Position numbers and translations under genes: made by a program. The notes beneath the pieces were generated by a model, which was not told where the DNA came from, did not search any database, and saw nothing but the letters and a program-made list of their open reading frames with translations. Positions 9,211 to 56,010 of a stretch of DNA of 64,000 nt are shown in pieces. How positions within the stretch are numbered: the stretch's first letter is position 1; every line of letters starts with the position of its first letter. Source of the DNA: Macrostomum lignano (Eukaryota); the NCBI GenBank assembly GCA_002269645.1, contig NIVC01000513.1, positions 186,001 to 250,000 on the forward strand. Direction: 5' to 3'.

Positions 9211-10583
9211 CCGAACTTGTCTCTCTAATCAATGTTCACAGACTAAGAAAAGAGGGCCGATTGCTTCTTAATTTATTGTAGAGTAGAATAGCGAAAAACT
9301 CTATTTTGACTACTTAAAGTAAATCTTCTGTTTGAGACACTCCTATCCTGTGTAATCGCGTTTTTTGTTACTTTTAAACCGAGCCGAAAACAAATTCAAG
9401 TTACCAGAGAAATAATTATTAGTGCCAGCGCGTCCGTTTCAGAAATCGGAAAATTAGAAATTCAAAATGCCGCTGTTTTTTAACTTTTTTAAAGGTGTGA
9501 GTGTGTATTTTAACCGCATAATCGTTTCCTTGTTTTGAGATTGGATCCGCGCTGTCATTTAATACGTCTGCCTCCCAATTATCGTTGTTGTCAAACATTT
9601 TTCAAAGCTAATTAGTTTTTTCAGAGAAACTTCGAGTATGAAAGCTTATGTCATTTTAAAAGGTCACCATTTGGTGTTAAACAAAAATTATAAGCTTTCT
9701 TGGTTATTAGTTCTATTTTCTGTTTTAATATTAAAGTAGGGCATTGCTATTATGTATTGCCACTATTCTGCTCTCATATTATGCGTTTTCATATAGTCAG
9801 TGTGATGCGATTTCAGTTATTAGCCTTGTGCATTATTTATGATCATTATTTCCTTTCAAATAGCGATCTTTAAACCTGGGCTCGGCAAGAGAGGGGAGTG
9901 GAGGGGAGATGAGGGAACAATGCTGAGAAAAGACAGACTTTAAGCAGCCCGGATAGAGAGGTTTAGGGGGCGAGCCGGGCTTTGCCGACCGATGCTTTAA
10001 AGCAATAGTCGCCATGAATATCCTGTCTGTATCTAAATATAATAAATACATATGCTATTCATCATTATTAAACCTCTAATGCTACTGTTCATATTATAAT
10101 TAAATTACCTTTCCTTGTGATAACAGTATAAATGCTTTATTCAATTAACTAATACACATTTATTCAGCAAAATAAAAAGGGACAAAAACAAACCATTTTA
10201 CAAAAATTCTGCTTTTTCAAATTCAACTATTAATGAAAAGTGTATTATTTTGTTCGATACATGGAGACAGGTAAATGCATCAGATAAGAGAAGAGAAATA
10301 AAAAGCAGAATTCAGTGTCTTGTTAATTGAATGCACACCCTTCTGCGGGTCTACCTCGAAGAAAGCGGTACCTAGGGCAAAGAAGAGTCAGTTTGAAGCG
10401 TTTTATTGTCTGCGACTCTGGGCTGGGTCCGTACAGTCGTATCTGAGGCGTGCTAGAATCACTGAGTTGCGTCTAAAGTGCATCTGCCTCATTTTATAAA
10501 TTAGAATCGAATTTCGTATTTTTATCAACTGTGTTTGGTCTACTTGAGTTAGTAGAAACTAGAAAGATAAGTACTAACACAAC

Positions 10584-12269
10584 CAGGGGCGTCGCCATGG
10601 ATTTTATGGTGGGGGGACAAAGAAAATTATACATGTACATTATTTTCAGAATCGGTGTTGTCAGCACTCATTTTAGCGCCTCGGGCACTCATTTTAGCGC
10701 CGCAGGCACTCATTTTAGCGCCGCAGGCACTCATTTTAGCGCCTCAGGCACTCATTTTAGCGCCGCAGGCACTCATTTTAGCGCCGCAGGCACTCATTTT
10801 AGCGCCGCAGGCACTCATTTTAGCGCCTCAGGCACTCATTTTAGCGCCTCAGGCACTCATTTTAGCGCCTCGGGCACTCATTTTAGCGCCGCAGGCACTC
10901 ATTTTAGCGCCTCAGGCACTCATTTTAGCGCGGCAGGCACTCATTTTAGCGCCTCAGGCACTCATTTTAGCGCCGCAGGCACTCATTTTAGCGCCTCGGG
11001 CACTCATTTTAGCGCCGCAGGCACTCATTTTAGCGCCTGGGGCACTCATTTTAGCGCGGCAGGCACTCATTTTAGCGCCACAGGCACTCATTTTAGCGCC
11101 GCAGGCACTCATTTTAGCGCCTCGGGCACTCATTTTAGCGCCTCGGGCACTCATTTTAGCGCCGCAGGCACTCATTTTAGCACCGCAGGCATTCATTTTA
11201 GCGCCTCAGGCACTCATTTTAGCGCCTCAGGCACTCATTTTAGCGCGGCAGGCACTCATTTTAGCGCCTCAGGCACTCATTTTAGCGCCGCAGGCACTCA
11301 TTTTAGCGCCTCGGGCACTCATTTTAGCGCCTCTGGCACTTATTTTAGCGCCTCAGGCACTCATTTTAGCGCCGCAGGCACTCATTTTAGCGCTGCAGGC
11401 ACTCATTTTAGCGCTGCAGGCACTCATTTTAGCGCCTCGGGCACTCATTTTAGCGCCGCAGGCACTCATTTTAGCGCCTCAGGCACTCATTTTAGCGCCT
11501 CAGGCACTCATTTTAGCGCGGCAGGCACTCATTTTAGCGCCGCAGGCACTCATTTTAGCGCCGCAGGCACTCATTTTAGCGCCGCAGGCACTCATTTTAG
11601 CGCCTGGGGCACTCATTTTAGCGCCTCTGGCACTCATTTTAGCGCCGCAGGCACTCATTTTAGCGCCACAGGCACTCATTTTAGCGTCACAAGCACTCAT
11701 TTTAGCGCCTCAGGCACTCATTTTAGCGCCTCTGGCACTCATTTTAGCGCTGCAGGCACTCATTTTAGCGCCTCTGGCACTCATTTTAGCGCCTCAGGCA
11801 CTCATTTTAGCGCCGCAGGCACTCATTTTAGCGCTGCAGGCACTCATTTTAGCGCCTGGGGCACTCATTTTAGCGCCTCTGGCACTCATTTTAGCGCCTC
11901 TGGCACTCATTTTAGCGCCTGGGACACTCATTTTAGCGCTGCAGGCACTCATTTTAGCGCCTGGGGCACTCATTTTAGCGCCTCTGGCACTCATTTTAGC
12001 GCCTCAGGCACTCATTTTAGCGCCGCAGGCACTCATTTTAGCGCTGCAGGCACTCATTTTAGCGCCTGGGGCACTCATTTTAGCGCCTCTGGCACTCATT
12101 TTAGCGCCTCAGGCACTCATTTTAGCGCCGCAGGCACTCATTTTAGCGCCGCAGGCACTCATTTTAGCGCCGCCAGGCACTCATTTTAGCGCCGCCAGGC
12201 ACTCATTTTAGCGTCCAAATAGCGGCACTATGTTTTGTCGCCCTGTCCCCCCTGTTGGCGACGCCCCTG
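10584..12269. mobile_element. Non-autonomous TIR element (hAT/MITE-like) with a central 21-bp tandem array
   Basis: Perfect 14-bp TIR CAGGGGCGTCGCCA ... TGGCGACGCCCCTG; subterminal GGGGGGACA / TGTCCCCCC; flanking 8-mers AACACAAC and AACATGAC (6/8), a possible decayed 8-bp TSD. Confidence 0.8.
10664..12213. repeat. Minisatellite, 21-bp unit GGCACTCATTTTAGCGCC+NNN (~73 copies)
   Basis: Constant 18-nt core plus a variable 3-nt slot (GCA/TCA/TCG/TCT/TGG/ACA). Confidence 0.98.
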
Positions 12270-29537: not shown

Positions 29538-32500
29538 ACACAACACAGCTATAACGGAGACTAGGAATAATGATTTGTATTTGCACGGAGGGTTCAAGCT
29601 TTCGAAGGTGAGAATACATTTTTGAAGATAGAATTTTTGCTTAATGCATTCCTGCGGAAATTCCTAACTTTGATCTGATTTATGCAATTTTCCAGTCTGG
29701 AAAGAAAATCACATTCTACAACGACATCTGGAAAATCTCAGGTACATTGGACTAAATTGATTATTAAATTTCTGTGCAGTAATACTTTCAAAGATGGACA
29801 AATATCTTAAAAGAATTTATACATAACCTTCTTTATCAGCTGGCATCATAAAATTCATTTTTTCAGTTCAGGATAGTCAAAGATTAAAATGTGTGAAAAT
29901 TTCGTCAGGGCATGGAGACGTGCCTGAGGCCAGGGCCTATCACCACTTGCAGTAAGTGCCCCCTTTTGCACTATTTGTAGTAGTAAATTTGCTAACTTTA
30001 TCACAACTTTATCAACCAGATAAATACAAATCTGAACTTAAGAACTGTCATTGACAGAACGAAAAAATATATTTTTTTAATAATGTATTTTTTTAATTCC
30101 AGCCTATTCGAGAATTTATTAATCCTGTTTGGCGGCAAGAGCAATCTTAATGAGGCCTCCTGCATTCCCGGAACCTACCAGTTCGACGTTTGTAAGCGAT
30201 TCTAGTGTTGCATTTCAATGATATGAAATTGTATGCAGTATGACCCTCATAAGCGCTACACTTACCGTACAATGTCAAGGACTAATATAAGGCCATGCAG
30301 AGACGTAGCCTAGGCGCAAGGGGGTCACGGCCCCTCTCAATTGGCTGGCTAAAATTATGGCGCTCTTCTGACAGCTGATTTATCGCCCCATGCAGCAGTT
30401 GAGGCGCCTCTGCTCCCATTTTTTCAGTTTCCTAATGCGTGATTATTTTGTTTTTGGCGCAACTGATGCTGGCGCCTCTGGTGCTGGCGCCTCTGGTGCT
30501 GGCGCCTCTGGTGCTGGCGCCTCTGGTGCTGGCGCCTCTGGTGCTGGCGCCTCTGGTGCTGGCGCCTCTGGTGCTGGCGCCTCTGGTGCTGGCGCCTCTG
30601 GTGCTGGCGCCTCTGGTGCTGGCGCCTCTGGTGCTGGCGCCTCTGGTGCTGGCGCCTCTGGTGCTGGCGCCTCTGGTGCTGGCGCCTCTGATGCTGGCGC
30701 CTCTGATGCTGGCGCCTCTGGTGCTGGCGCCTCTGGTGCTGGCGCCTCTGGTGCTGGCGCCTCTGGTGCTGGCGCCTCTGGTGCTGGCGCCTCTGATGCT
30801 AAAGCCCGTTGCTAGCGCTCTTACCCCTTAAAGCCCATCGACGCCCCTAAGGTAGTAAAAGCCGAGTTGATATCCTTAAATTTTTCATTCCGATGTTGAA
30901 AAGCCCAAAAATCTGCAAATAAACTCTGCAGTGGTGCGCAAGTGGACCCACGTCAAGGCCAGCGGAGAGGAGCCCGAGCAGGTGTACAACACCAGCAACA
31001 TGATCGAATCGCAGCTTGTTGTATTCGGCGGCCATAGCAACGGCGTCCTTAGCAATACGACGTTTGTGTACGACATCATGGCGCAGCACTGGCACCGGGC
31101 AACGGTCAGCGGCGCGCCGCCGTCGCCCAGATGCGAACACGCGGCCGCTGCGGCGGGCCAGAGCCTGTACGTGTTCGGAGGCACCGGAGGTCAGGGCTGC
31201 TTTTACAACGACTTGCACCAGCTGGACACTGGTGAGTGGCCCCGGTACTCAAAGACAAGTAAAAGTGGATGAATAGTTTCATAGCCAGGGACTCACAGAG
31301 ATGATGCATGTATGTGTATTTGTCAACTGGTCTTGACGGTTGAGCTATGGACCTCGCACGTTCATAATTGCGGATTCCAGCTTCATTAGCATGGATTCCA
31401 GCTTCATTAGCATGGATTCCAGCTTCATTAGCATGGATTCCAGCTTCATTAGCATGGATTCTAGCTTCATTATCATGGATTCCAGCTTCATTAGCATGGA
31501 TTCCAGCTTCATTAGCATGGATTCCAGCTTCATTAGCATGGATTCCAGCTTCATTAGCATGGATTCCAGCTTCATTAGCATGGATTCCAGCTTCATTAGC
31601 ATGGATTCCAGCTTCATTAGCATGGATTCCAGCTTCATTAGCATGGATTCCAGCTTCATTAGCATTGATTCCAGCTTCATTAGCATGGATTCCAGCTTCA
31701 TTAGCATGGATTCCAGCTTCATTAGCATGGATTCCAGCTTCATTAGCATGGATTCCAGCTTCATTAGCATTGATTCCAGCTTCATTAGCATGGATTCCAG
31801 CTTCATTAGCATGGATTCCAGCTTCATTAGCATGGATTCCAGCTTCATTAGCATGGATTCCAGCTTCATTAGCATGGATTCTAGCTTCATTAGCATGGAT
31901 TCCAGCTTCATTAGCATGGATTCCAGCTTCATTAGCATGGATTCCAGCTTCATTAGCATGGATTCCAGCTTCATTAGCATTGATTCCAGCTGAACTAAAT
32001 ACCATATTTTCCAGTCAGTTGAATCTTCATAAAGCATCGAAAGCGCTGAAGTTCAAATGGCCTCTACTTACAGTAGCCAATTCAGAATAATTTCCCGATT
32101 TCTGCAGCCACCCTGCAGTGGTCGCGCGTCCCAGTCGAGGGTCACCTGCTGCCGATGCCGCGAGCCGGGCACAGCCTCACCGCGCACCAGTCCAAGGACC
32201 TGTTCCTATTCGGGGGTTACAACGACTGCGTGTTCCCGGATGGCGGCCCGGTCCAGGAGCCGCTGATGAAGTTCAGCCTCTACAAGCGGACTTGGAAGGT
32301 GCCGTCGGCTCTGCCAGCGTCTGGTGGGCAGCCGGAGAACCTGATCCACCACGGTGCCTGGATACACCGGCACATGTGCTACATCTTCGGGGGCGCGGGT
32401 CTGGAGGACAGCGCCAGCCTGATTCGCATCTTTCGCATCATCAACCCCAAGAAGCGCAAGGGTGAGACTGGGGATTATGATATGGAATTTAATCGAGAAC

Positions 32501-46848: not shown

Positions 46849-49239
46849 ATGATGTCTGCTGGTAGCAGTGCGGCAACTTCAATGGTAAGAACATTTTCAT
46901 TGGGAAATTCCATCTGTCAGACAGTCAAACTGGATTAACCCTACCCTCAAATTGCTGAATTTTCAACAGAGCATTCTCGATGGCGGCAGAGTTGAGTTTT
47001 CAACTCGACTGGATCGAGCAAGACGCCTGCTGATGCTCTTGCTGATTGCGGTTCTGTCAATTCTGCTTCTAGTTTTCGTTCTGCTCTACGCTCTCAGCAC
47101 AGCTCGGTTACCACCTGGAGCAGCCACTCCCAAGCATCCCAGCCTGTGCACCAGCGAGGCCTGCATAAGTGCAAGCGCACTGCTGCAGAGCCACATCGAC
47201 CGATCTGCGGACCCATGCCAAGACTTCTACAGCTTCGCCTGCGGCGGTTTCCATAAAACCCACCCCTTCACCGCCGAGACCGTGGGCTCAGTACTACAGG
47301 AGGACAACTCCATTCAAGGAAATCTATTTGAGATGATGTACTTCAAGAACTTGTCCAAGCCCAGAGACGCAAGCGAAGCGCAGCTGTTCCAGACTCTGCG
47401 ATCCATCTACGGGACCTGCATGGATTGGCGCGGCTCCAGCGTTCTGAATTCTAAGAAAGAGGAATTTCTCCCGAACAGCTGGCAAACTGGAGAACGACCG
47501 TTCGACATGAAATCATTAGTGAGACCTTTGTTGGACTTTCTAGAGGGCTACTCAGGCATTGAAGACTTCCTAGCGAGACTGGTGATATCCGGTACATCGG
47601 ATCTGTTCAGATTGTCGCCAGGCTCGGTGGAGCGGAGTCTGAGATTGCACTCGTCACCATACTACCTATCTACCCTGAAATCCTGGAATCATGTTTTCAA
47701 TGTCGGAATTTCTGCATTAGAAGATTTCAGTGATCTCATAGACCTGAATTTGACTGTTAGTATAAATCAGATGAAGCCTGCAGTTCAGCAAATGTTAAAC
47801 AAAGGCGAATCGTACTTGAAAGTTGGTCCTTACCATCTGGAACAGCTGCAGAATTTTACTCAGTTTGAGGCAGAAAATCTCAACTTTAACTGGACGGAGT
47901 TTTACAGCGCTGTGAGCAAGTATTCAGCCAATAAGTTACCTCCCTCAATGAGAGTCAAGATTATTAGGTACCCGCTATTATTTTTTGTACTCGAGCAGCT
48001 CACAACGGAGCTGGAGCACAGACAGGGACCGTACTACGACTTTATTCGCATGGACTCTGCATTGTCGGCAGTCAATTTTCTTCCAGACGAATCGTTTAAA
48101 TTCTTTAAAAACCTTTTCGGGCAACAAAAGTATCTCATTCATGAGAAAGAAAGCCGGAACAGCTCAAGACTGTGCATGGACATGATGTTGGGCTCCATGC
48201 CGCCAGTGGCTTTGCAGATGTTCAGCAGCGCCTTCGTCACAGATGACTTCAACTCAGTGAAAGCGGTAGTCGGCGACATCAAGGAGGCCATGTGGGAGAA
48301 TGTGGACAGCGAGGCGTGGATTGAGCAGCCGAGTAAGGCAGCAATTAAGAAGAAGCTCGACGCCATTCGGAGCACCGTCGGCTACCCCCAGTTCAACATT
48401 TCCGAGTTCACCGAAGGCTACTCAAAAGTTGCTGCTCAAGTTAACCAAAGCAGAACATTTGGCGATGTTGTTTTGCAGTTTAAAAGCACTCAGCTTCAGA
48501 ATCGACTTTGGATTTTGACAGCTGACAAACAGGACTTGATGCCAAGTGACATTTTTTCAAGAATTTTTACTGTCAACGCTCATTACTCGCTACACCTGAA
48601 TTCGCTCTTCATCTACCTGGGCCTGCTGCTCACCAAAGTCTACATGAAGGGCTACCCGACTGCCTGCTGTACGGAGGCATCGGCGGCACAGTCGGCCACG
48701 AGGTCGGGCACGCCTTTGACAAATTAGGCAATAAAAAAATTAGCGTTGGAGAGGAACAGATAGGTGTATTTGACAATCTCACAGCGCTGCGGTATGACAA
48801 GCAATCTCAATGTCTGGCAGATTTCTACAACCAGATCATCGATCCTGAGTTTGCAAAATCCGACATTTGGGACAATTCAATGAATGCAGGAGTGCGGAAG
48901 TTTAACGAAAATTTTGCCGATATTGTTGGCATCAATTCTGCCTTCCGAGCTTACAGAAGCAGTTCGGCAAAGTCTGGGAGGCGGCCCCGGCTGATTCCAG
49001 GAGAGAAGCTGGCGGGGCTGACACCGGATCAGCTGTTCTTCATCCACAATGCTCAGCTGCTCTGCACAAAGGCGGAAAAGAACACCCTGATCTCTGTATT
49101 CAAAGATAAGCGTCACTCGCCTCCGCATCCCAGAGTGAACGGTCAGGTGATGCAGTCGAAGGACTTCGCCAGGGTGTTCAAATGCCAGCCGGGAGACCCC
49201 ATGTACCTGACTGATAATGACAAGTGTCACTTCTGGTGA
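46849..49239 (+). CDS. M13 family metallopeptidase (neprilysin/ECE-like), 2 exons, ~768 aa if a 1-nt frameshift at ~48663 is corrected
   Basis: Exon 46849-46884, intron GTAAGA...AACAG, exon 46970-49239. Type II TM anchor, CTSEAC...DPCQDFYSFACGG, VNAHY. After the shift the frame reads LLYGGIGGTVGHEVGHAFD (HExxH), ENFAD, HSPPHPRVNG, FARVFKCQPGDPM...CHFW. Confidence 0.92.
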
Positions 49240-51170: not shown

Positions 51171-51989
51171 CCTAAGTATTAAGTTAACCAAATTATTCAG
51201 TCAACTTCACAATGCAACTACATGCCAGCTTATACTCGTAGTGGCTGCTATAAAAACATACAAAAACACTGCAATACCATCTGGCACTCTCAATCGAAAC
51301 AGCTAGACTTAATTAGTAAGGAAATGCTTTCCAGAGGAGCATATAATCCTTTCTGCAAACATCTGCCATTAGAGGTACTCGAGTCGTTTTAGCAGCTGTC
51401 CTCCGTGCTCAAGGGTTCTGATTCTCACTGTTCCAGTCGTAGGCGTTTAGCGCTGAGTTCGTGACTATCCATGATGATGAAGATCATGTGTGTCATGTCA
51501 TTGAGAGAAAGTCAGGGCCGCTGAGCAACCTCTGTGCGACTTTTCTGGACCAGAGATAGCCGGGGTATTTTTTACTCCAAAATAATTGCCTTTCATCCCG
51601 TGCTGGGTCGCAGGTGCAAAAACAAATCGTCGACATCGTTTTGAATAGAAGCTGAAACGCGAATTCCCTGTGTTTTTCTGCTGTCTCAAACGACATCAGG
51701 TGGTGCCTTATAAAAGCGCTTGTTTTGAGGCAAAAATTCTCAGACCGACTGTAAAAACATCAGTACACGACCGATCGGGTACAGTCCCCCGCCTCCCAAT
51801 GAGTAAAAATAGACAACTGACTATCAACACCAAGGTTTGCATGCGTCTCTCACTCTGAACTGCGTCTTCAGGTTTATTTTTTGACGACAGAATAAACATA
51901 ACAGCCAGTGCACAATTGCTGAGAAAATACTGAGGTTTGAAGTCTGGGTCTCATCTTTTCTATCCTCATCGAAGATATGAAGTGAGAAG

Positions 51990-52955
51990 CGACTTCACAT
52001 CTCCGACACTTCATATCTCCGACACTTCCATTTCTCCGACACTTCATATCTCCGACACTTCATATCTCCGACACTTCATTTCTCCGACACTTCATATCTC
52101 CGACACTTCATATCTCCGACACTTCATATCTCCGATACTTCATATCTCCGACACTTCATATCTCCGACACTTCATATCTCCGACACTTCATATCTCCGAC
52201 ACTTCATATCTCCGACACTTCATATCTCCGACACTTCACATCTCCGACACTTCATATCTCCGACACTTCATATCTCCGACACTTTATATCTCCGATACTT
52301 CATATCTCCGACACTTCATATCTCCGACACTTCATATCTCCGACACTTCATATCTCCGACACTTCATATCTCCGACACTTCATATCTCCGACACTTCACA
52401 TCGCCGACACTTCACATCTCCGACATTTCATATCTCCGATACTTCATATCTCCGACACTTCACATCTCCGACACTTCATATCTCCGACACTTCATATCTC
52501 CGACACTTCATATCTCCGACATTTCATATCTCCGACACTTCATATCTCCGACACTTTATATCTCCGACACTTCACATCTCCGACATTTCATATCTCCGAC
52601 ACTTCATATCTCCGACACTTCACATCGCCGACATTTCATATCTCCGACACTTCACATCTCCGACACTTCATATCTCCGACACTTCATATCTCCGACACTT
52701 CATATCTCCGACATTTCATATCTCCGACACTTCATATCTCCGACACTTCATATCTCCGACACTTTATATCTCCGATACTTCATATCTCCGACACTTCATA
52801 TCTCCGACATTTCATATCTCCGACACTTCATATCTCCGATACTTCACATCTCCGACACTTCATATCTCCGACACTTTATATCTCCGACACTTCACATCGC
52901 CGACACTTCACATCTCCGACACTTCACATCTCCGATACTTCACATCTCCGACATT
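51990..52955. repeat. Minisatellite, 16-bp CTTCATATCTCCGACA (~60 copies)
   Basis: Tandem array; source of the spurious 348-aa ORF. Confidence 0.97.
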
Positions 52956-53289
52956 TCGCTCTAAATTTATAATAAATAAATAAATGAATGGATATTGACA
53001 ATTCGAATTTTATGGAGTGGTATATATTTCTTTCCGAATAATGAGACACTCAACAGTTATTACAGGAGTCTACATGGGTAGTGCAGTCTCGCAGGGTGGG
53101 ATATAGGATAATATGCGCGAATGCTAGGATTAAGGATTAACAAAACAGTCTGTCCTGATCAAATTTTCCTGATCACTGATCAATCCTGATCTTCCTGATC
53201 GCTTCGATACCTGCAGGGGAATAACGCACTGACTTCAAAGAAACATGGGAAAATAACAGCTGAGATGGACTGAAACGATATATATCGAC

Positions 53290-53630
53290 TGCATAGCAAC
53301 AGCATAGCAATAGCATAGCAACGGCATAGCAAATGCATAGCAACTGCACAGAAACTGCAAAACAACTGCGTAGCAACTGCCTAGAAACTGCATAGCAACT
53401 GCATAGCAACTGCCTAGAAACTGCATAGCAACTGCATAGCAACTGCATAGCAACTGCATAGCAACTGCATAGCAACTGCATAGCAACAGCATAGCAATTG
53501 TATGAGTATGTGCTGCTACTACAGACTGCAATAGCTAAGTGACAAAAGCCAATATTTTAAGACAAATACATTAATTATAGTATCTAGGTGGCAATAGCCT
53601 AGCAACAGCATAGCAACAGCATAGGGACAG
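53290..53630. repeat. 11-bp repeat GCAACTGCATA downstream of the YWPGMW precursor
   Basis: Tandem array, same unit as 54340-54600. Confidence 0.93.
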
Positions 53631-53823: not shown

Positions 53824-54711
53824 TCAATCATAGTAGTAATAATAGTTGTTGTGCAGGCCGTTCAGGATGCTGCAGGCGGCGGGGTCGCCAGTCTCGCCGC
53901 AGGCTTTGCCCAGCCAGTACGGATGGTCGTTGCCGTAGCCGTAGGACCGCTTGGACGGCCGGCGCTGCTGGTAGCGCCACATGCCAGGCCAGTAGTAGGC
54001 GCGCTTGCCCTCCAGTGGCGAGCTCTCGTCGTAGTAGCGATCGAAGTTCCACATGCCAGGCCAGTAGTAGCCTCGCTTGGCGTACCTGGCCCCGCCGTAG
54101 TAGTCGTAGTAGCGCTCCCCGTAGCCGCCGCCGTCGCTTCGGTCGAACTGCCACATTCCCGGCCAGTAGCTGGCTCGGCGCTCCATCAGGCTGGCGGAAG
54201 CTGGCAGACCGGCCGTTGGTTTGGCGCAGAAGCAGATGGTGTACAGCAGGAGCAGAGCCAGCGGAGCGGCCAGGCGGACTGTCTGCGGCCTGAGCAGGGG
54301 AGAGTGGCGAACCGATGCGTTCGAGATTAAGTTTGGAATAGCATGGCAACCGCATAGCAACCGCATTACAGCTGCAAAGTAACTGCATGTATATTAACCG
54401 CATAGAAACTGCATGGTAATGGCATATAGCATCGGCATGGGAAAAGCATAGCAACTACATAGCAACCGCATGGAAACCGCATAGCAACAGCATAGCAACT
54501 GCATGGAAACCGCATAGCAACAGAATAGCAACTGCATAGCAACTGCATAGTAACGGTACAGCAACCGCACAGCAACTGCATAGCAACTGCAACCGCACTG
54601 TAACTCATACGAGAGCCGAGTGAAAAATCGGTTAGCAGAATCTGGTGAAACTGAGCAATATGAAGTGAAAAGTAAAAAATAAAAGCCAGCTTACTTTCCA
54701 AGAGTTGTCAT
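53824..54711 (-). CDS. Secreted Tyr/Trp/Gly-rich peptide precursor with three YWPGMW repeats, 2 exons, ~160 aa
   Basis: Exon 54711-54695 (MTTLG, AA|GTAAGC) and exon 54289-53824 (CTCAG|G; phase 2). Signal peptide LAAPLALLLLYTICFCAKPTAG; RR-ASYWPGMW, KR-GYYWPGMW, KR-AYYWPGMW; further RR/KR sites. Confidence 0.85.
54340..54600. repeat. 11-bp repeat GCAACTGCATA inside the precursor intron
   Basis: Tandem array. Confidence 0.93.
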
Positions 54712-55299
54712 TCCGGACGCGGTAGACTTAAACAGCAGTCAGATCAGAGCCTCAAGAGTTGCGGCAGCTCGAAGTCCAGCGGTTCTTCCCAGCAGGAGGG
54801 AACTGGGATAATTTATAGAGCATTCGGCCAGCCAATCAGAACCTTGCCAGCAATGCGCAATCGATAGGATATTTAGAATCGCCTCATCAAGGATCTGCCG
54901 ATCTGGGTCTGGTTTGATCTGATGGCCAAATATGGATCTGCTGGTGGCCGCCTACACGTGTCCTGACCCGTTCCTCCACGGGCTGGTTCCTGACAAGATA
55001 TGGGATATTATTCTCCGCTTCGATTCTAAAATTAGCCTTGAAAGATGAGAAAACAGAAATATAAAATCTTGGCTGCAGAGACGCCTTCTCGACTCTCGGC
55101 ACAGTTTTGAGTCTAAAAGTCAACAGACTTGCCTCGATACAGGACAGCAGGGCAAAATATCCGACTGCAATGTTTTTGACATTGTAAAATGACTTATAAG
55201 GTTTCTCATCGTTTTGAATAATTATAGCATTTGCATCTTAAGAAAAATATACAAAAACAACCTTCGTAGGAGTTTCCTATGTGTAAAAATTCTGTCTAA

Positions 55300-55625
55300 C
55301 ATGCAAAATCATTTCTAACATGTACACTTTTGTCCCACATGTACACTCCTATCTAACATGCACACTCCTATCTAACATGTACACTTATCTAACATGTACA
55401 CTTTATCTAACATGTACAGTCCTATCTGACATGTGCACTCTTATCTAACATGTACACTATTATCTAACATGAACACTCCTATCTAACATGTACACTCCTA
55501 TCTAACATGTACACTCTTATCTAACATGAACACTCCTATCTAACATGTACACTCCTGTCTAACAAGTACACTCTTTAACATGTACACTCCTATCTAACAT
55601 GTACACTCTTGTCTAACATGTACAC
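55300..55625. repeat. Minisatellite, ~19-20-bp TCTAACATGTACACTCCTA
   Basis: Tandem array. Confidence 0.94.
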
Positions 55626-56010
55626 TCCGAAAATAATTTGAATAAAACGCCCAGCTTACATTTCTTTCCATTCCACGAAGCCCCTCCCAAACAATGTTGT
55701 GCAGGGCAGAACCAACTCAAAAATGTTCAAGAATGCCCTGGCGTCAACTCCCGCTGTGCCGAGCTCGTCTAGAAAGCTTCACGCGCAAACAGGTTCAGAG
55801 TTTTACAATCTGATAGAAAAATTTTGAAATCAGCTCTTTGACGTGGCTGACGACCTGTCGAAAGTCGAGGCTAATGAAGCGTGCTTGTCACGCATTACAT
55901 GGATCTCATTAAAATCCTGTTTCCCCACTCAAACTGGACTAACGAAAAAAAATGAAGAAGCTAAAAATGATTTAAAGAGATACATTTTTGTCACAAGATT
56001 TAATAGAAAA

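What the first reader, a model, noticed from the sequence alone, without database searches (positions are those of the whole stretch)
53824..54711. Novel-looking prohormone with repeated YWPGMW peptides and a Tyr-rich, Cys-bridged tail
Seen: a signal peptide, then dibasic-flanked products ASYWPGMWQFDRSDGGGYGERYYDYYGGARYA, GYYWPGMWNFDRYYDESSPLEG, AYYWPGMWRYQQ, SYGYGNDHPYWL-G-K (possible amide) and ACGETGDPAAC...NNYYYYYD. The conserved motif sits at the N-terminus of each peptide, unlike most amidated neuropeptides. I do not recognise YWPGMW from any named family. Inference: a new neuropeptide or pheromone/seminal peptide family; the high Tyr content leaves DOPA-type adhesive or eggshell function as an alternative.
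Basis: partly seen in the sequence, partly recalled or inferred. Interest (0 to 1): 0.85.

Follow-up and report, generated by a model that had tools for sequence, protein, structure and literature searches.

The report
Orphan flatworm multi-copy secreted peptide precursor
This is a real, transcribed, two-exon gene of the flatworm Macrostomum lignano. It encodes a small secreted precursor that looks built to be cut into several short YWPGMW peptides, probably signalling peptides, and the family has not been described before but is of an ordinary kind.

Summary
On the minus strand, 54711-54695 plus 54289-53824 splice into a 160-aa protein. It has a signal peptide, three dibasic-flanked YWPGMW units and a two-cysteine tail. 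The protein is 100% identical to 'hypothetical protein BOX15_Mlig013514g1' of Macrostomum lignano, a gene model built from RNA-seq.

The gene is under purifying selection. Three genome copies differ only at four synonymous sites. An orthologue at about 45% identity keeps the cleavage sites, the 12-residue cores and the block YWLGKACGETGD..ACS.LNG, but not the spacers.

Exhaustive searches found only four relatives. One is an M. lignano paralogue with at least five GYYWPGMWNFRNAD units. Two AYYWPG-type precursors come from an unidentified eukaryote. In all 22 units the core sits exactly two residues after a dibasic pair.

Nothing matched in Pfam, PDB or the literature, and there is no folded domain (pLDDT 38). 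The tyrosine-rich stretches are not conserved (14% against 6% Tyr), which weakens the DOPA/eggshell idea. The 'YWL-amide' is doubtful.

The best reading is a lineage-restricted, non-amidated neuropeptide or peptide-hormone precursor. Tissue, cleavage and receptor are untested. It is a new member of a known kind, of moderate interest.

The parts
54812..54817 (-). TATA box (TATAAA), 106 nt upstream of the ATG. An inverted CCAAT box lies at 54832-54836.
   Evidence: One search gives the positions. One search shows both elements are invariant in the three M. lignano copies. Promoter function is inferred, not tested.
54695..54711 (-). Exon 1 coding part: ATG plus 14 nt (MTTLG, K split in phase 2). 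The donor is AA|GTAAGC.
   Evidence: Identical in all three genome copies. The spliced product equals the NCBI model.
54290..54694 (-). Intron, 405 nt, GT...AG. Most of it is an 11-bp tandem array (54341-54591).
   Evidence: The paralogous copies carry a 559-nt intron; the 154-nt difference is not a multiple of 3. Intron identity is 95.5% against 99.4% for exon 2.
53824..54289 (-). Exon 2: the rest of the CDS (aa 6-160) plus the TGA stop.
   Evidence: GC3 0.83. The only differences between copies are synonymous.
54223..54289 (-). Signal peptide, continuing from exon 1; about aa 1-28, with the hydrophobic core at aa 12-27. The exact cleavage site was not predicted. It is followed by the short pro-region KPTAGLPASASLME.
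   Evidence: The Kyte-Doolittle maximum of 2.6 falls at aa 16-26. AlphaFold places a helix at 13-27. The orthologue and P0005 have comparable N-terminal hydrophobic leaders.
54079..54180 (-). Unit 1: RR | ASYWPGMWQFDR + spacer SDGGGYGERYYDYYGGARYA (aa 43-76). YWPGMW lies at 54168-54151.
   Evidence: Core plus cleavage site are 12/14 identical to the orthologue; the spacer is 5/20.
54007..54078 (-). Unit 2: KR | GYYWPGMWNFDR + spacer YYDESSPLEG (aa 77-100). YWPGMW lies at 54066-54049.
   Evidence: core 10/14, spacer 2/10. The core is nearly identical to the paralogue's GYYWPGMWNFRNAD.
53947..54006 (-). Unit 3: KR | AYYWPGMWRYQQ | RR PS KR (aa 101-120). YWPGMW lies at 53994-53977.
   Evidence: core 10/14.
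53827..53946 (-). C-terminal product SYGYGNDHPYWLGKACGETGDPAACSILNGLHNNYYYYYD (aa 121-160). The conserved block is aa 130-150 (53919-53857). Cys136 is at 53901-53899 and Cys145 at 53874-53872.
   Evidence: the block is 18/21 identical to the orthologue, while the Tyr tail (aa 151-160) is 0/10. One search aligns YWLG with the YWPG of other units. The disulfide is inferred.

Best explanation
This is a bona fide two-exon gene of Macrostomum lignano, present in three near-identical genome copies. It encodes a 160-aa intrinsically disordered preproprotein.

Proposed mechanism:
1. The signal peptide takes the protein into the secretory pathway.
2. A prohormone-convertase-type protease cuts after the RR/KR pairs. 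This releases three peptides that each begin [A/G]-x-Y-W-P-G-M-W. The core is about 11-12 residues and may be further trimmed at the conserved Arg at position 12.
3. Acidic, Tyr-rich spacer fragments are released as by-products.
4. A 40-residue C-terminal piece is also released. Its conserved YWLGKACGETGD..ACS.LNG block probably forms a C136-C145 disulfide loop.

The peptides are not C-terminally amidated, because no Gly follows the motif. Their invariant 'message' is N-terminal, as in enkephalins or orcokinin/pedal peptides.

The most likely role is as neuropeptides or peptide hormones of a family restricted to macrostomid flatworms and a few other animals.

What is shown: the gene structure, transcript-based annotation, purifying selection, unit architecture, the restricted family, and the absence of a fold. 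What is inferred: cleavage, the disulfide, the cell type and the signalling function.
For: 1. Identity and expression.
- The protein is 100% identical to BOX15_Mlig013514g1.
- GenBank annotation of Mlig_3_7 was derived only from RNA-seq transcript assemblies (PMC5730564).
- A conserved TATA/CCAAT promoter lies upstream.

2. Selection.
- The three genome copies differ at 4 CDS sites, all synonymous third positions.
- Exon 2 is 99.4-99.6% identical between copies, against 95.5% for the intron and 81-96% for the flanks.
- Against the orthologue from RNA-seq run SRR30276804, the cores plus cleavage sites are 32/42 identical and the C-terminal block 18/21.
- In the same comparison the spacers are only 10/55 identical and the signal/pro region 8/42.
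- 26 of 57 conserved residues with degenerate codons use different codons.

3. Architecture.
- In five proteins, 22 of 22 [YFQ]W[PR] cores have a dibasic pair exactly at positions -4/-3. The background rate of dibasic pairs is 4.5% per position.
- Copy number varies: 3, 4, at least 5, and 7 units. This is the behaviour of a unit that functions after release.
- Many units end in RR followed by spacer and KR.

4. No folded domain (mean pLDDT 37.9) and no Pfam or PDB match.

5. The processing machinery exists. An M. lignano PC2 homologue is expressed in the nervous system, and its RNAi is lethal (PMC4490696). The PC2 promoter drives pan-neuronal reporters (PMC12435804).
Against: - There is no expression localisation, no peptidomic detection and no receptor.
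- The same precursor architecture is used by non-neuronal secreted peptides (antimicrobial multipeptide precursors, pheromones, seminal peptides).
- The lack of amidation and the very narrow phylogenetic distribution are less typical of classical neuropeptides.
- The two main flatworm neuropeptide catalogues (McVeigh 2009, Koziol 2016) could not be read. A prior description there cannot be excluded.
- Signal-peptide cleavage was not predicted with a dedicated tool.
Confidence: 0.55

Rival explanations
1. The precursor is processed in the same way but made by non-neuronal secretory cells (epidermal, pharyngeal, prostate or cement glands). On this reading the Trp/Tyr/Arg-rich peptides act outside the body, as antimicrobial or defensive peptides, or on a mating partner as seminal or pheromonal peptides.
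For: - The precursor architecture is shared with multipeptide antimicrobial and pheromone precursors (general knowledge).
- The peptides are rich in Trp, Tyr and Arg.
- The family is young, fast-evolving and copy-number variable. Reproductive and immune effectors typically behave this way.
- UniProt's automatic name for the paralogue is 'Salivary secreted protein', which is weak evidence.
Against: - Conservation of a precise 12-residue core across taxa suggests recognition by a specific receptor rather than membrane activity.
- No match was found in the supplementary files held as text for the M. lignano prostate/seminal-fluid screen. Those files may not contain sequences, so this is weak.
- Nothing ties the gene to any gland.
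Confidence: 0.3
2. This is a structural tyrosine-rich protein that is not cleaved into peptides. It would be cross-linked through DOPA/quinone or dityrosine in eggshell, adhesive or cuticle-like material.
For: The window protein has 14.4% Tyr and 12% Gly, with runs such as YYDYY and YYYYY. Flatworm eggshell precursors are Tyr/Gly-rich (general knowledge).
Against: - Tyr richness is not conserved: the orthologue has 6.0%, P0005 8.3% and P0006 5.9%.
- The Tyr-rich segments are exactly the unconserved spacers and tail (5/20, 2/10 and 0/10 identical).
- Selection instead preserves the dibasic sites and the YWPGMW cores.
- The protein is very small and varies in copy number.
Confidence: 0.05
3. This is not a functional gene. 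It would be a chance ORF or annotation artefact in GC-rich, repeat-flanked DNA.
For: The exon is embedded between 11-bp tandem arrays. Overlapping ORFs exist in other frames and on the other strand.
Against: - GC3 is 0.83 only in this frame.
- All substitutions between the copies are synonymous.
- An orthologous mRNA with the same architecture exists in another species.
- A paralogue and distant relatives exist.
- The gene model is RNA-seq based.
Confidence: 0.02

Closest known systems
Flatworm multi-copy neuropeptide prohormones (planarian npp/spp genes, Collins et al. 2010, PMC2953531)
   Same: Small secreted precursors with a signal peptide, tandem short peptides delimited by KR/RR, and unconserved spacers. 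They are processed by PC2, which is neuronal in M. lignano too.
   Different: No sequence relationship: WPG, YYW, YWP and related strings are absent from the 8 supplementary files of that catalogue held as text. Most catalogued flatworm peptides are C-terminally amidated with the conserved motif at the C-terminus. Here no Gly donor follows the motif and conservation is N-terminal.
Opioid-type (proenkephalin) and orcokinin/pedal-peptide-type precursors
   Same: Several non-amidated peptides per precursor, each starting right after a dibasic site with an invariant N-terminal 'message' and a variable C-terminal extension. The 'NFDR/QFDR' after the motif loosely recalls the orcokinin N-terminus NFDEIDR (from memory).
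   Different: The similarity is one of architecture only. The YGGF and NFDEIDR-type consensus sequences are not present, and no profile or database match was found. Homology is not claimed.
Wamide family (cnidarian GLWamides including cubozoan pQPGMWamide, PMC6402141; protostome MIP/allatostatin-B)
   Same: The tetrapeptide P-G-M-W is identical to the C-terminus of pQPGMWamide. Both are Trp-rich multi-copy precursors.
   Different: In Wamides the Trp is the amidated C-terminus (W-G-basic). Here PGMW is always followed by [QNHR]-[FYH]-x-R with no Gly, so the defining amidated Trp cannot form. In this family the motif sits at the N-terminal end of the unit.
Gly/Tyr-rich 'neuropeptide-like' antimicrobial peptides of C. 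elegans (nlp-29/31, cnc genes) and trematode Tyr-rich eggshell precursors
   Same: Small secreted proteins rich in Tyr and Gly. The nematode NLPs also carry dibasic sites.
   Different: There are no YGGY/YGGW repeats. Tyr/Gly richness is confined to unconserved spacers of the M. lignano copy and is absent from the relatives.
Luqin/RYamide-type precursors (C-terminal two-cysteine motif)
   Same: There is a conserved pair of cysteines about 10 residues apart in the C-terminal part of the precursor.
   Different: There is no RF/RW/RY-amide peptide. The Cys loop directly abuts the last unit. The spacing is C-x8-C here (CGETGDPAAC), and no sequence similarity was detected.

Membership tests
Multi-copy neuropeptide / peptide-hormone precursor (prohormone-convertase substrate) | N-terminal signal peptide | tested here: met
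   Hydrophobic core at aa 12-27 (Kyte-Doolittle maximum 2.6). AlphaFold helix at 13-27. Comparable leaders in the orthologue and P0005. No dedicated predictor such as SignalP was available.
Multi-copy neuropeptide / peptide-hormone precursor (prohormone-convertase substrate) | Repeated peptide units delimited by dibasic cleavage sites | tested here: met
   3 units in the window protein. 22 of 22 cores in five family members have KR/RR exactly at -4/-3, against a 4.5% background.
Multi-copy neuropeptide / peptide-hormone precursor (prohormone-convertase substrate) | Conservation concentrated in peptides and cleavage sites, not in spacers; copy number variable | tested here: met
   32/42 identical for cores against 10/55 for spacers. 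3, 4, at least 5, and 7 units in different genes.
Multi-copy neuropeptide / peptide-hormone precursor (prohormone-convertase substrate) | No globular domain | tested here: met
   Mean pLDDT 37.9 with no residue above 70. No Pfam or PDB hit.
Multi-copy neuropeptide / peptide-hormone precursor (prohormone-convertase substrate) | Expression in neurons or endocrine cells, mature peptides detectable, cognate receptor | not testable with these tools
   No expression atlas, peptidome or receptor data could be reached.
Wamide (GLWamide / MIP) | C-terminal Trp-amide generated from W-G-(K/R) | tested here: not met
   PGMW is followed by Q/N/R/H and never by Gly in any of the 12 PGMW units of the three Macrostomum-type proteins.
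Orcokinin / pedal peptide type | Family consensus sequence (for example NFDEIDRSGFGF; x-[FL]-D-S-[IL]-...-G-[FL]) | tested here: inconclusive
   Tested only by eye against a consensus recalled from memory. An 'NFDR' fragment is present but the rest of the consensus is absent. No profile of that family was available. Searches returned no such relatives.
Tyr-rich DOPA/quinone-tanned structural precursors (flatworm eggshell / adhesive) | High Tyr (with or without Gly) content as the conserved property of the protein | tested here: not met
   Tyr is 14.4% here but 6.0%, 8.3% and 5.9% in relatives. The Tyr-rich segments are the least conserved.
Luqin-type precursor | Single RF/RW/RY-amide peptide after the signal peptide plus a distal C-x(about 10)-C motif | tested here: not met
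   No R[FWY]-G-basic site is present in the sequence. Only the Cys pair is present.

The most novel reading that the evidence does not exclude
YWPGMW/AYYWPG peptides are a previously unrecognised family of non-amidated neuropeptides with an N-terminal message. They have their own receptor, occur in macrostomid flatworms and at least one other animal lineage (the ENA ERZ25070786 organism), and carry a conserved disulfide-loop co-peptide. This would add a new signalling system to the spiralian neuropeptide repertoire, in a transgenic model flatworm.
Probability: 0.45. Interest if true: 0.5.

Novelty: new member of a known kind. Interest (0 to 1): 0.38.

Why it matters
Macrostomum lignano is the flatworm model in which transgenesis works, and its PC2-dependent peptide signalling is essential. 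However, I could reach no peptide catalogue for it. An orphan, strongly constrained, multi-copy peptide family offers a concrete ligand set for receptor deorphanisation, a cell-type marker or promoter, and RNAi tests.

Its features are unusual among flatworm peptides: an N-terminal aromatic 'message', no amidation, and a conserved Cys-loop co-peptide. The patchy distribution also bears on how new peptide families arise.

Lineage-specific peptide precursors turn up in most neuropeptidome surveys, so a specialist would find this useful rather than surprising.

Tried and rejected
- **Pfam.** Searches on the protein and on all relatives gave nothing above noise.
- **PDB.** Sequence search gave no hit at E<=1.
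- **AlphaFold2.** No confident structure, so no fold search was run.
- **Word-seeded searches of 5.8 billion proteins.** With the single sequence and with two profiles, only the family members listed were found.
- **Exhaustive HMMER over 1.84 billion representatives.** This added P0003 and P0005. P0004 (809 aa, a repetitive protein) was rejected as spurious because it has no motif, no dibasic frame and is low-complexity.
- **JGI metagenome scan.** 290 pattern matches, none confirmed.
- **Full-text searches.** Queries for YWPGMW, PGMW, YYWPG, YFWPG, YYWRG, YWPGV/M, YYWP, YWPG, FWPGM, WPGVK, WLGKAC and Mlig013514 returned no relevant paper. The exception was the cubozoan pQPGMWamide, which was rejected as a relative because it needs amidation.
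- **Supplementary files.** Those of Collins 2010, Wudarski 2017 and Weber 2018 contained nothing. Hall 2024 and the multiome preprint have no supplements held.
- **Papers not held.** McVeigh 2009 and Koziol 2016 could not be read.
- **Species identification.** I tried to identify the ERZ25070786 organism from cluster mates of neighbouring transposon ORFs. All were singletons with no names. The species behind SRR30276804 could not be determined.
- **Unspliced ORF.** The 180-aa ORF 53824-54366 was considered as the product and rejected. Its extra N-terminus lies in the 11-bp array, whose length differs by 154 nt (not a multiple of 3) between copies.

Full report
**1. Observation.**
On the minus strand an ATG at 54711 opens a 17-nt coding exon ending in AA|GTAAGC. 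A 405-nt intron ends in ...CTGCTCAG at 54290. Exon 2 runs from 54289 to the TGA at 53824.

The 160-aa product is MTTLGKPQTVRLAAPLALLLLYTICFCAKPTAGLPASASLME-RR-ASYWPGMWQFDRSDGGGYGERYYDYYGGARYA-KR-GYYWPGMWNFDRYYDESSPLEG-KR-AYYWPGMWRYQQ-RR-PS-KR-SYGYGNDHPYWLGKACGETGDPAACSILNGLHNNYYYYYD.

- The degenerate DNA pattern for WPGMW occurs three times in the window, against 0.06 expected by chance.
- Third-position GC is 0.83 in this frame and 0.53-0.56 in the others.
- The tandem-repeat arrays nearby lie in the intron and the 3' flank, not in the exon.

**2. What organism and is it a gene?**

The same protein is encoded at three places in assembly GCA_002269645.1. The window corresponds to NIVC01000513.1. 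That annotation was produced solely from genome-guided RNA-seq transcript assemblies (PMC5730564), so both the transcript and the splice junction have experimental backing.

- The three copies differ at four CDS positions, all synonymous third positions.
- Exon 2 is 99.4-99.6% identical between copies. The intron is 95.5% identical and differs in length by 154 nt. The flanks are 81-96% identical.
- A TATA box (54812-54817) and an inverted CCAAT box (54832-54836) lie about 106-125 nt upstream of the ATG. Both are invariant in the three copies.

**3. Relatives.**
A word-seeded search of 5.8 billion proteins and an exhaustive HMMER search of 1.84 billion cluster representatives together found only four true relatives.

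- *An orthologue.* An mRNA contig from RNA-seq run SRR30276804 (species not identifiable here) has a full ORF with a signal peptide. It carries four units (RR-ASYWPGMWHFNR..., KR-GYFWPGMWHFSR..., KR-GYFWPGMWQYRR..., KR-ATFWPGMWRHRQ...) and the tail ...RYWLGKACGETGDLYACSVLNGIFDY.
- *A paralogue.* A second M. lignano protein, UniRef A0A1I8HFB1, is automatically named 'Salivary secreted protein'. It has at least five identical KR-GYYWPGMWNFRNAD units.
- *Two distant loci.* Both come from one ENA long-read assembly, ERZ25070786, of an unidentified AT-richer eukaryote. One is an intact 312-aa precursor with a signal peptide and seven units such as KR-AYYWRGVKNHRWYNDF-KRR and KR-AYYWPGVKK.... The other is interrupted by frameshifts and has at least seven units.

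Nothing was found in JGI metagenomes.

**4. Anatomy of conservation.**
Between the window protein and its orthologue:

| Region | Identical residues |
|---|---|
| Three cleavage-site-plus-core segments | 32/42 |
| Block YWLGKACGETGDxxACSxLNG | 18/21 |
| Spacers | 10/55 |
| Signal/pro region | 8/42 |
| Tyr tail | 0/10 |

- 26 of the 57 conserved residues that have degenerate codons use different codons. The amino-acid conservation therefore reflects selection rather than recency.
- Across all five proteins, every one of 22 [YFQ]-W-[PR] cores has a dibasic pair exactly two residues before the aromatic residue. The background rate is 4.5%.
- Units often end with RR (or a conserved Arg at core position 12), followed by a variable spacer and the next KR.
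- Unit number varies between genes: 3, 4, at least 5, and 7.

These are the signatures of a precursor whose functional entities are the released peptides. The family consensus is [KR][KR] | [AG]-x-[YF]-W-[PR]-G-[MVI]-[WK]-x-[FYH]-x-[RW].

**5.
- *Product boundaries.* The Tyr/Gly-rich stretches (SDGGGYGERYYDYYGGARYA, YYDESSPLEG, NNYYYYYD) are the unconserved parts. Tyr content is 14.4% here against 6.0% in the orthologue and 6-8% in the distant relatives. High tyrosine is therefore a species-specific spacer property, not the selected feature. This removes most support for a DOPA or eggshell role.
- *The proposed amide.* SYGYGNDHPYWL-amide would need cleavage at a single Lys. In the four-sequence alignment, 'YWLG' falls in register with 'YWPG' and 'YWRG' of the other proteins. 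'YWLGK' is thus more simply a degenerate last unit fused to the Cys-loop block. Amidation is possible but unsupported.

**6. What it is not.**
- No Pfam family and no PDB relative match.
- AlphaFold2 gives mean pLDDT 37.9, with only the signal-peptide helix and short low-confidence elements.
- The tetrapeptide PGMW also ends the cubozoan GLWamide-family peptide pQPGMWamide (PMC6402141). The defining W-Gly-basic amidation site is never present here, so membership in the Wamides fails.
- No luqin-type amide, no YGGY/YGGW repeats and no full orcokinin consensus are present. This last comparison was by inspection against a consensus recalled from memory.
- The planarian prohormone catalogue does not contain WPG, YYW or YWP in its supplementary files held as text (PMC2953531).
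- Full-text searches with twelve motif fragments and the gene id returned no relevant paper.

**7. Mechanism (shown and inferred).**
Shown: a transcribed, selectively constrained, secretory-type, disordered multi-unit precursor that belongs to a tiny family.

Inferred steps:
- The signal peptide is removed at around aa 28.
- Convertase cleavage after RR43-44, KR77-78, KR101-102, RR115-116 and KR119-120 is followed by carboxypeptidase trimming.
- This yields three YWPGMW peptides and a C-terminal peptide with a C136-C145 loop.
- The peptides act on a receptor through their invariant N-terminal aromatic motif.

M. lignano has a PC2 homologue expressed in the nervous system whose knock-down is lethal (PMC4490696). 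Its promoter marks neurons (PMC12435804), so the machinery is in place.

I put about 0.55 on a neuropeptide or hormone role, about 0.3 on a non-neuronal secreted effector (antimicrobial, seminal or pheromonal), about 0.05 on a structural Tyr-rich protein, and about 0.02 on an artefact.

**8. Novelty and limits.**
To the extent I could search, the family is undescribed and is annotated only as 'hypothetical'. It is a new member of a familiar kind, the orphan multi-copy peptide precursor.

Limits:
- Peptide sequences printed only in figures or in supplements that are not held cannot be searched.
- No expression atlas was reachable.
- The source species of the orthologue and of the distant relatives remain unknown.

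Noticed in passing
window 53288-53497, 53591-53624 and 54341-54591: Arrays of the same 11-bp unit (GCATAGCAAC[TC]) lie on both sides of exon 2, in the 3' flank and filling most of the intron. The intron array differs in length between genome copies (intron 405 against 559 nt).
   Followed up: partly
window 46952-48727 (+): A neprilysin-like gene (Peptidase_M13_N, E=1e-22) lies about 5 kb from the precursor. An M13 peptidase also lies next to a second copy of the locus (L002). M13 enzymes degrade neuropeptides. The linkage is probably just conserved synteny between duplicated regions.
   Followed up: partly
L002, L003, L004 (GCA_002269645.1 contigs NIVC01000471.1, NIVC01000157.1, NIVC01000513.1): The locus is present three times, with identical protein and 4 synonymous differences. 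This fits the known hidden polyploidy and large duplicated fraction of the M. lignano genome.
   Followed up: partly
window 52500-52957 and 55295-55628: There are further long tandem arrays: a 16-bp unit with 28.6 copies and a 19-bp unit with 17.9 copies. ORFs through such arrays (for example 51937-52983) give spurious weak Pfam hits (Toxin_trans, VPS9, ToxN).
   Followed up: no
L006 9500-10663 (ENA ERZ25070786 ctg142615l): The second AYYWPG-type locus of the unidentified eukaryote needs at least two frameshifts to be read through (units appear in three frames). It is either a pseudogene or contains assembly errors. Several called genes on this contig contain in-frame stops under the standard code.
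   Followed up: partly
P0003 = UniRef A0A1I8HFB1 (not in window): The M. lignano paralogue with at least 5 identical GYYWPGMWNFRNAD units is named 'Salivary secreted protein' in UniProt. Its N-terminus looks like read-through of the 5' UTR, and the sequence is truncated at the C-terminus. The name appears to be automatic.
   Followed up: no
window 10531-12189 (+), 31106-32005 (-): Long ORFs here have only low-complexity Pfam hits (DUF4106, Alanine_zipper). They are probably translated repeats rather than genes.
   Followed up: no
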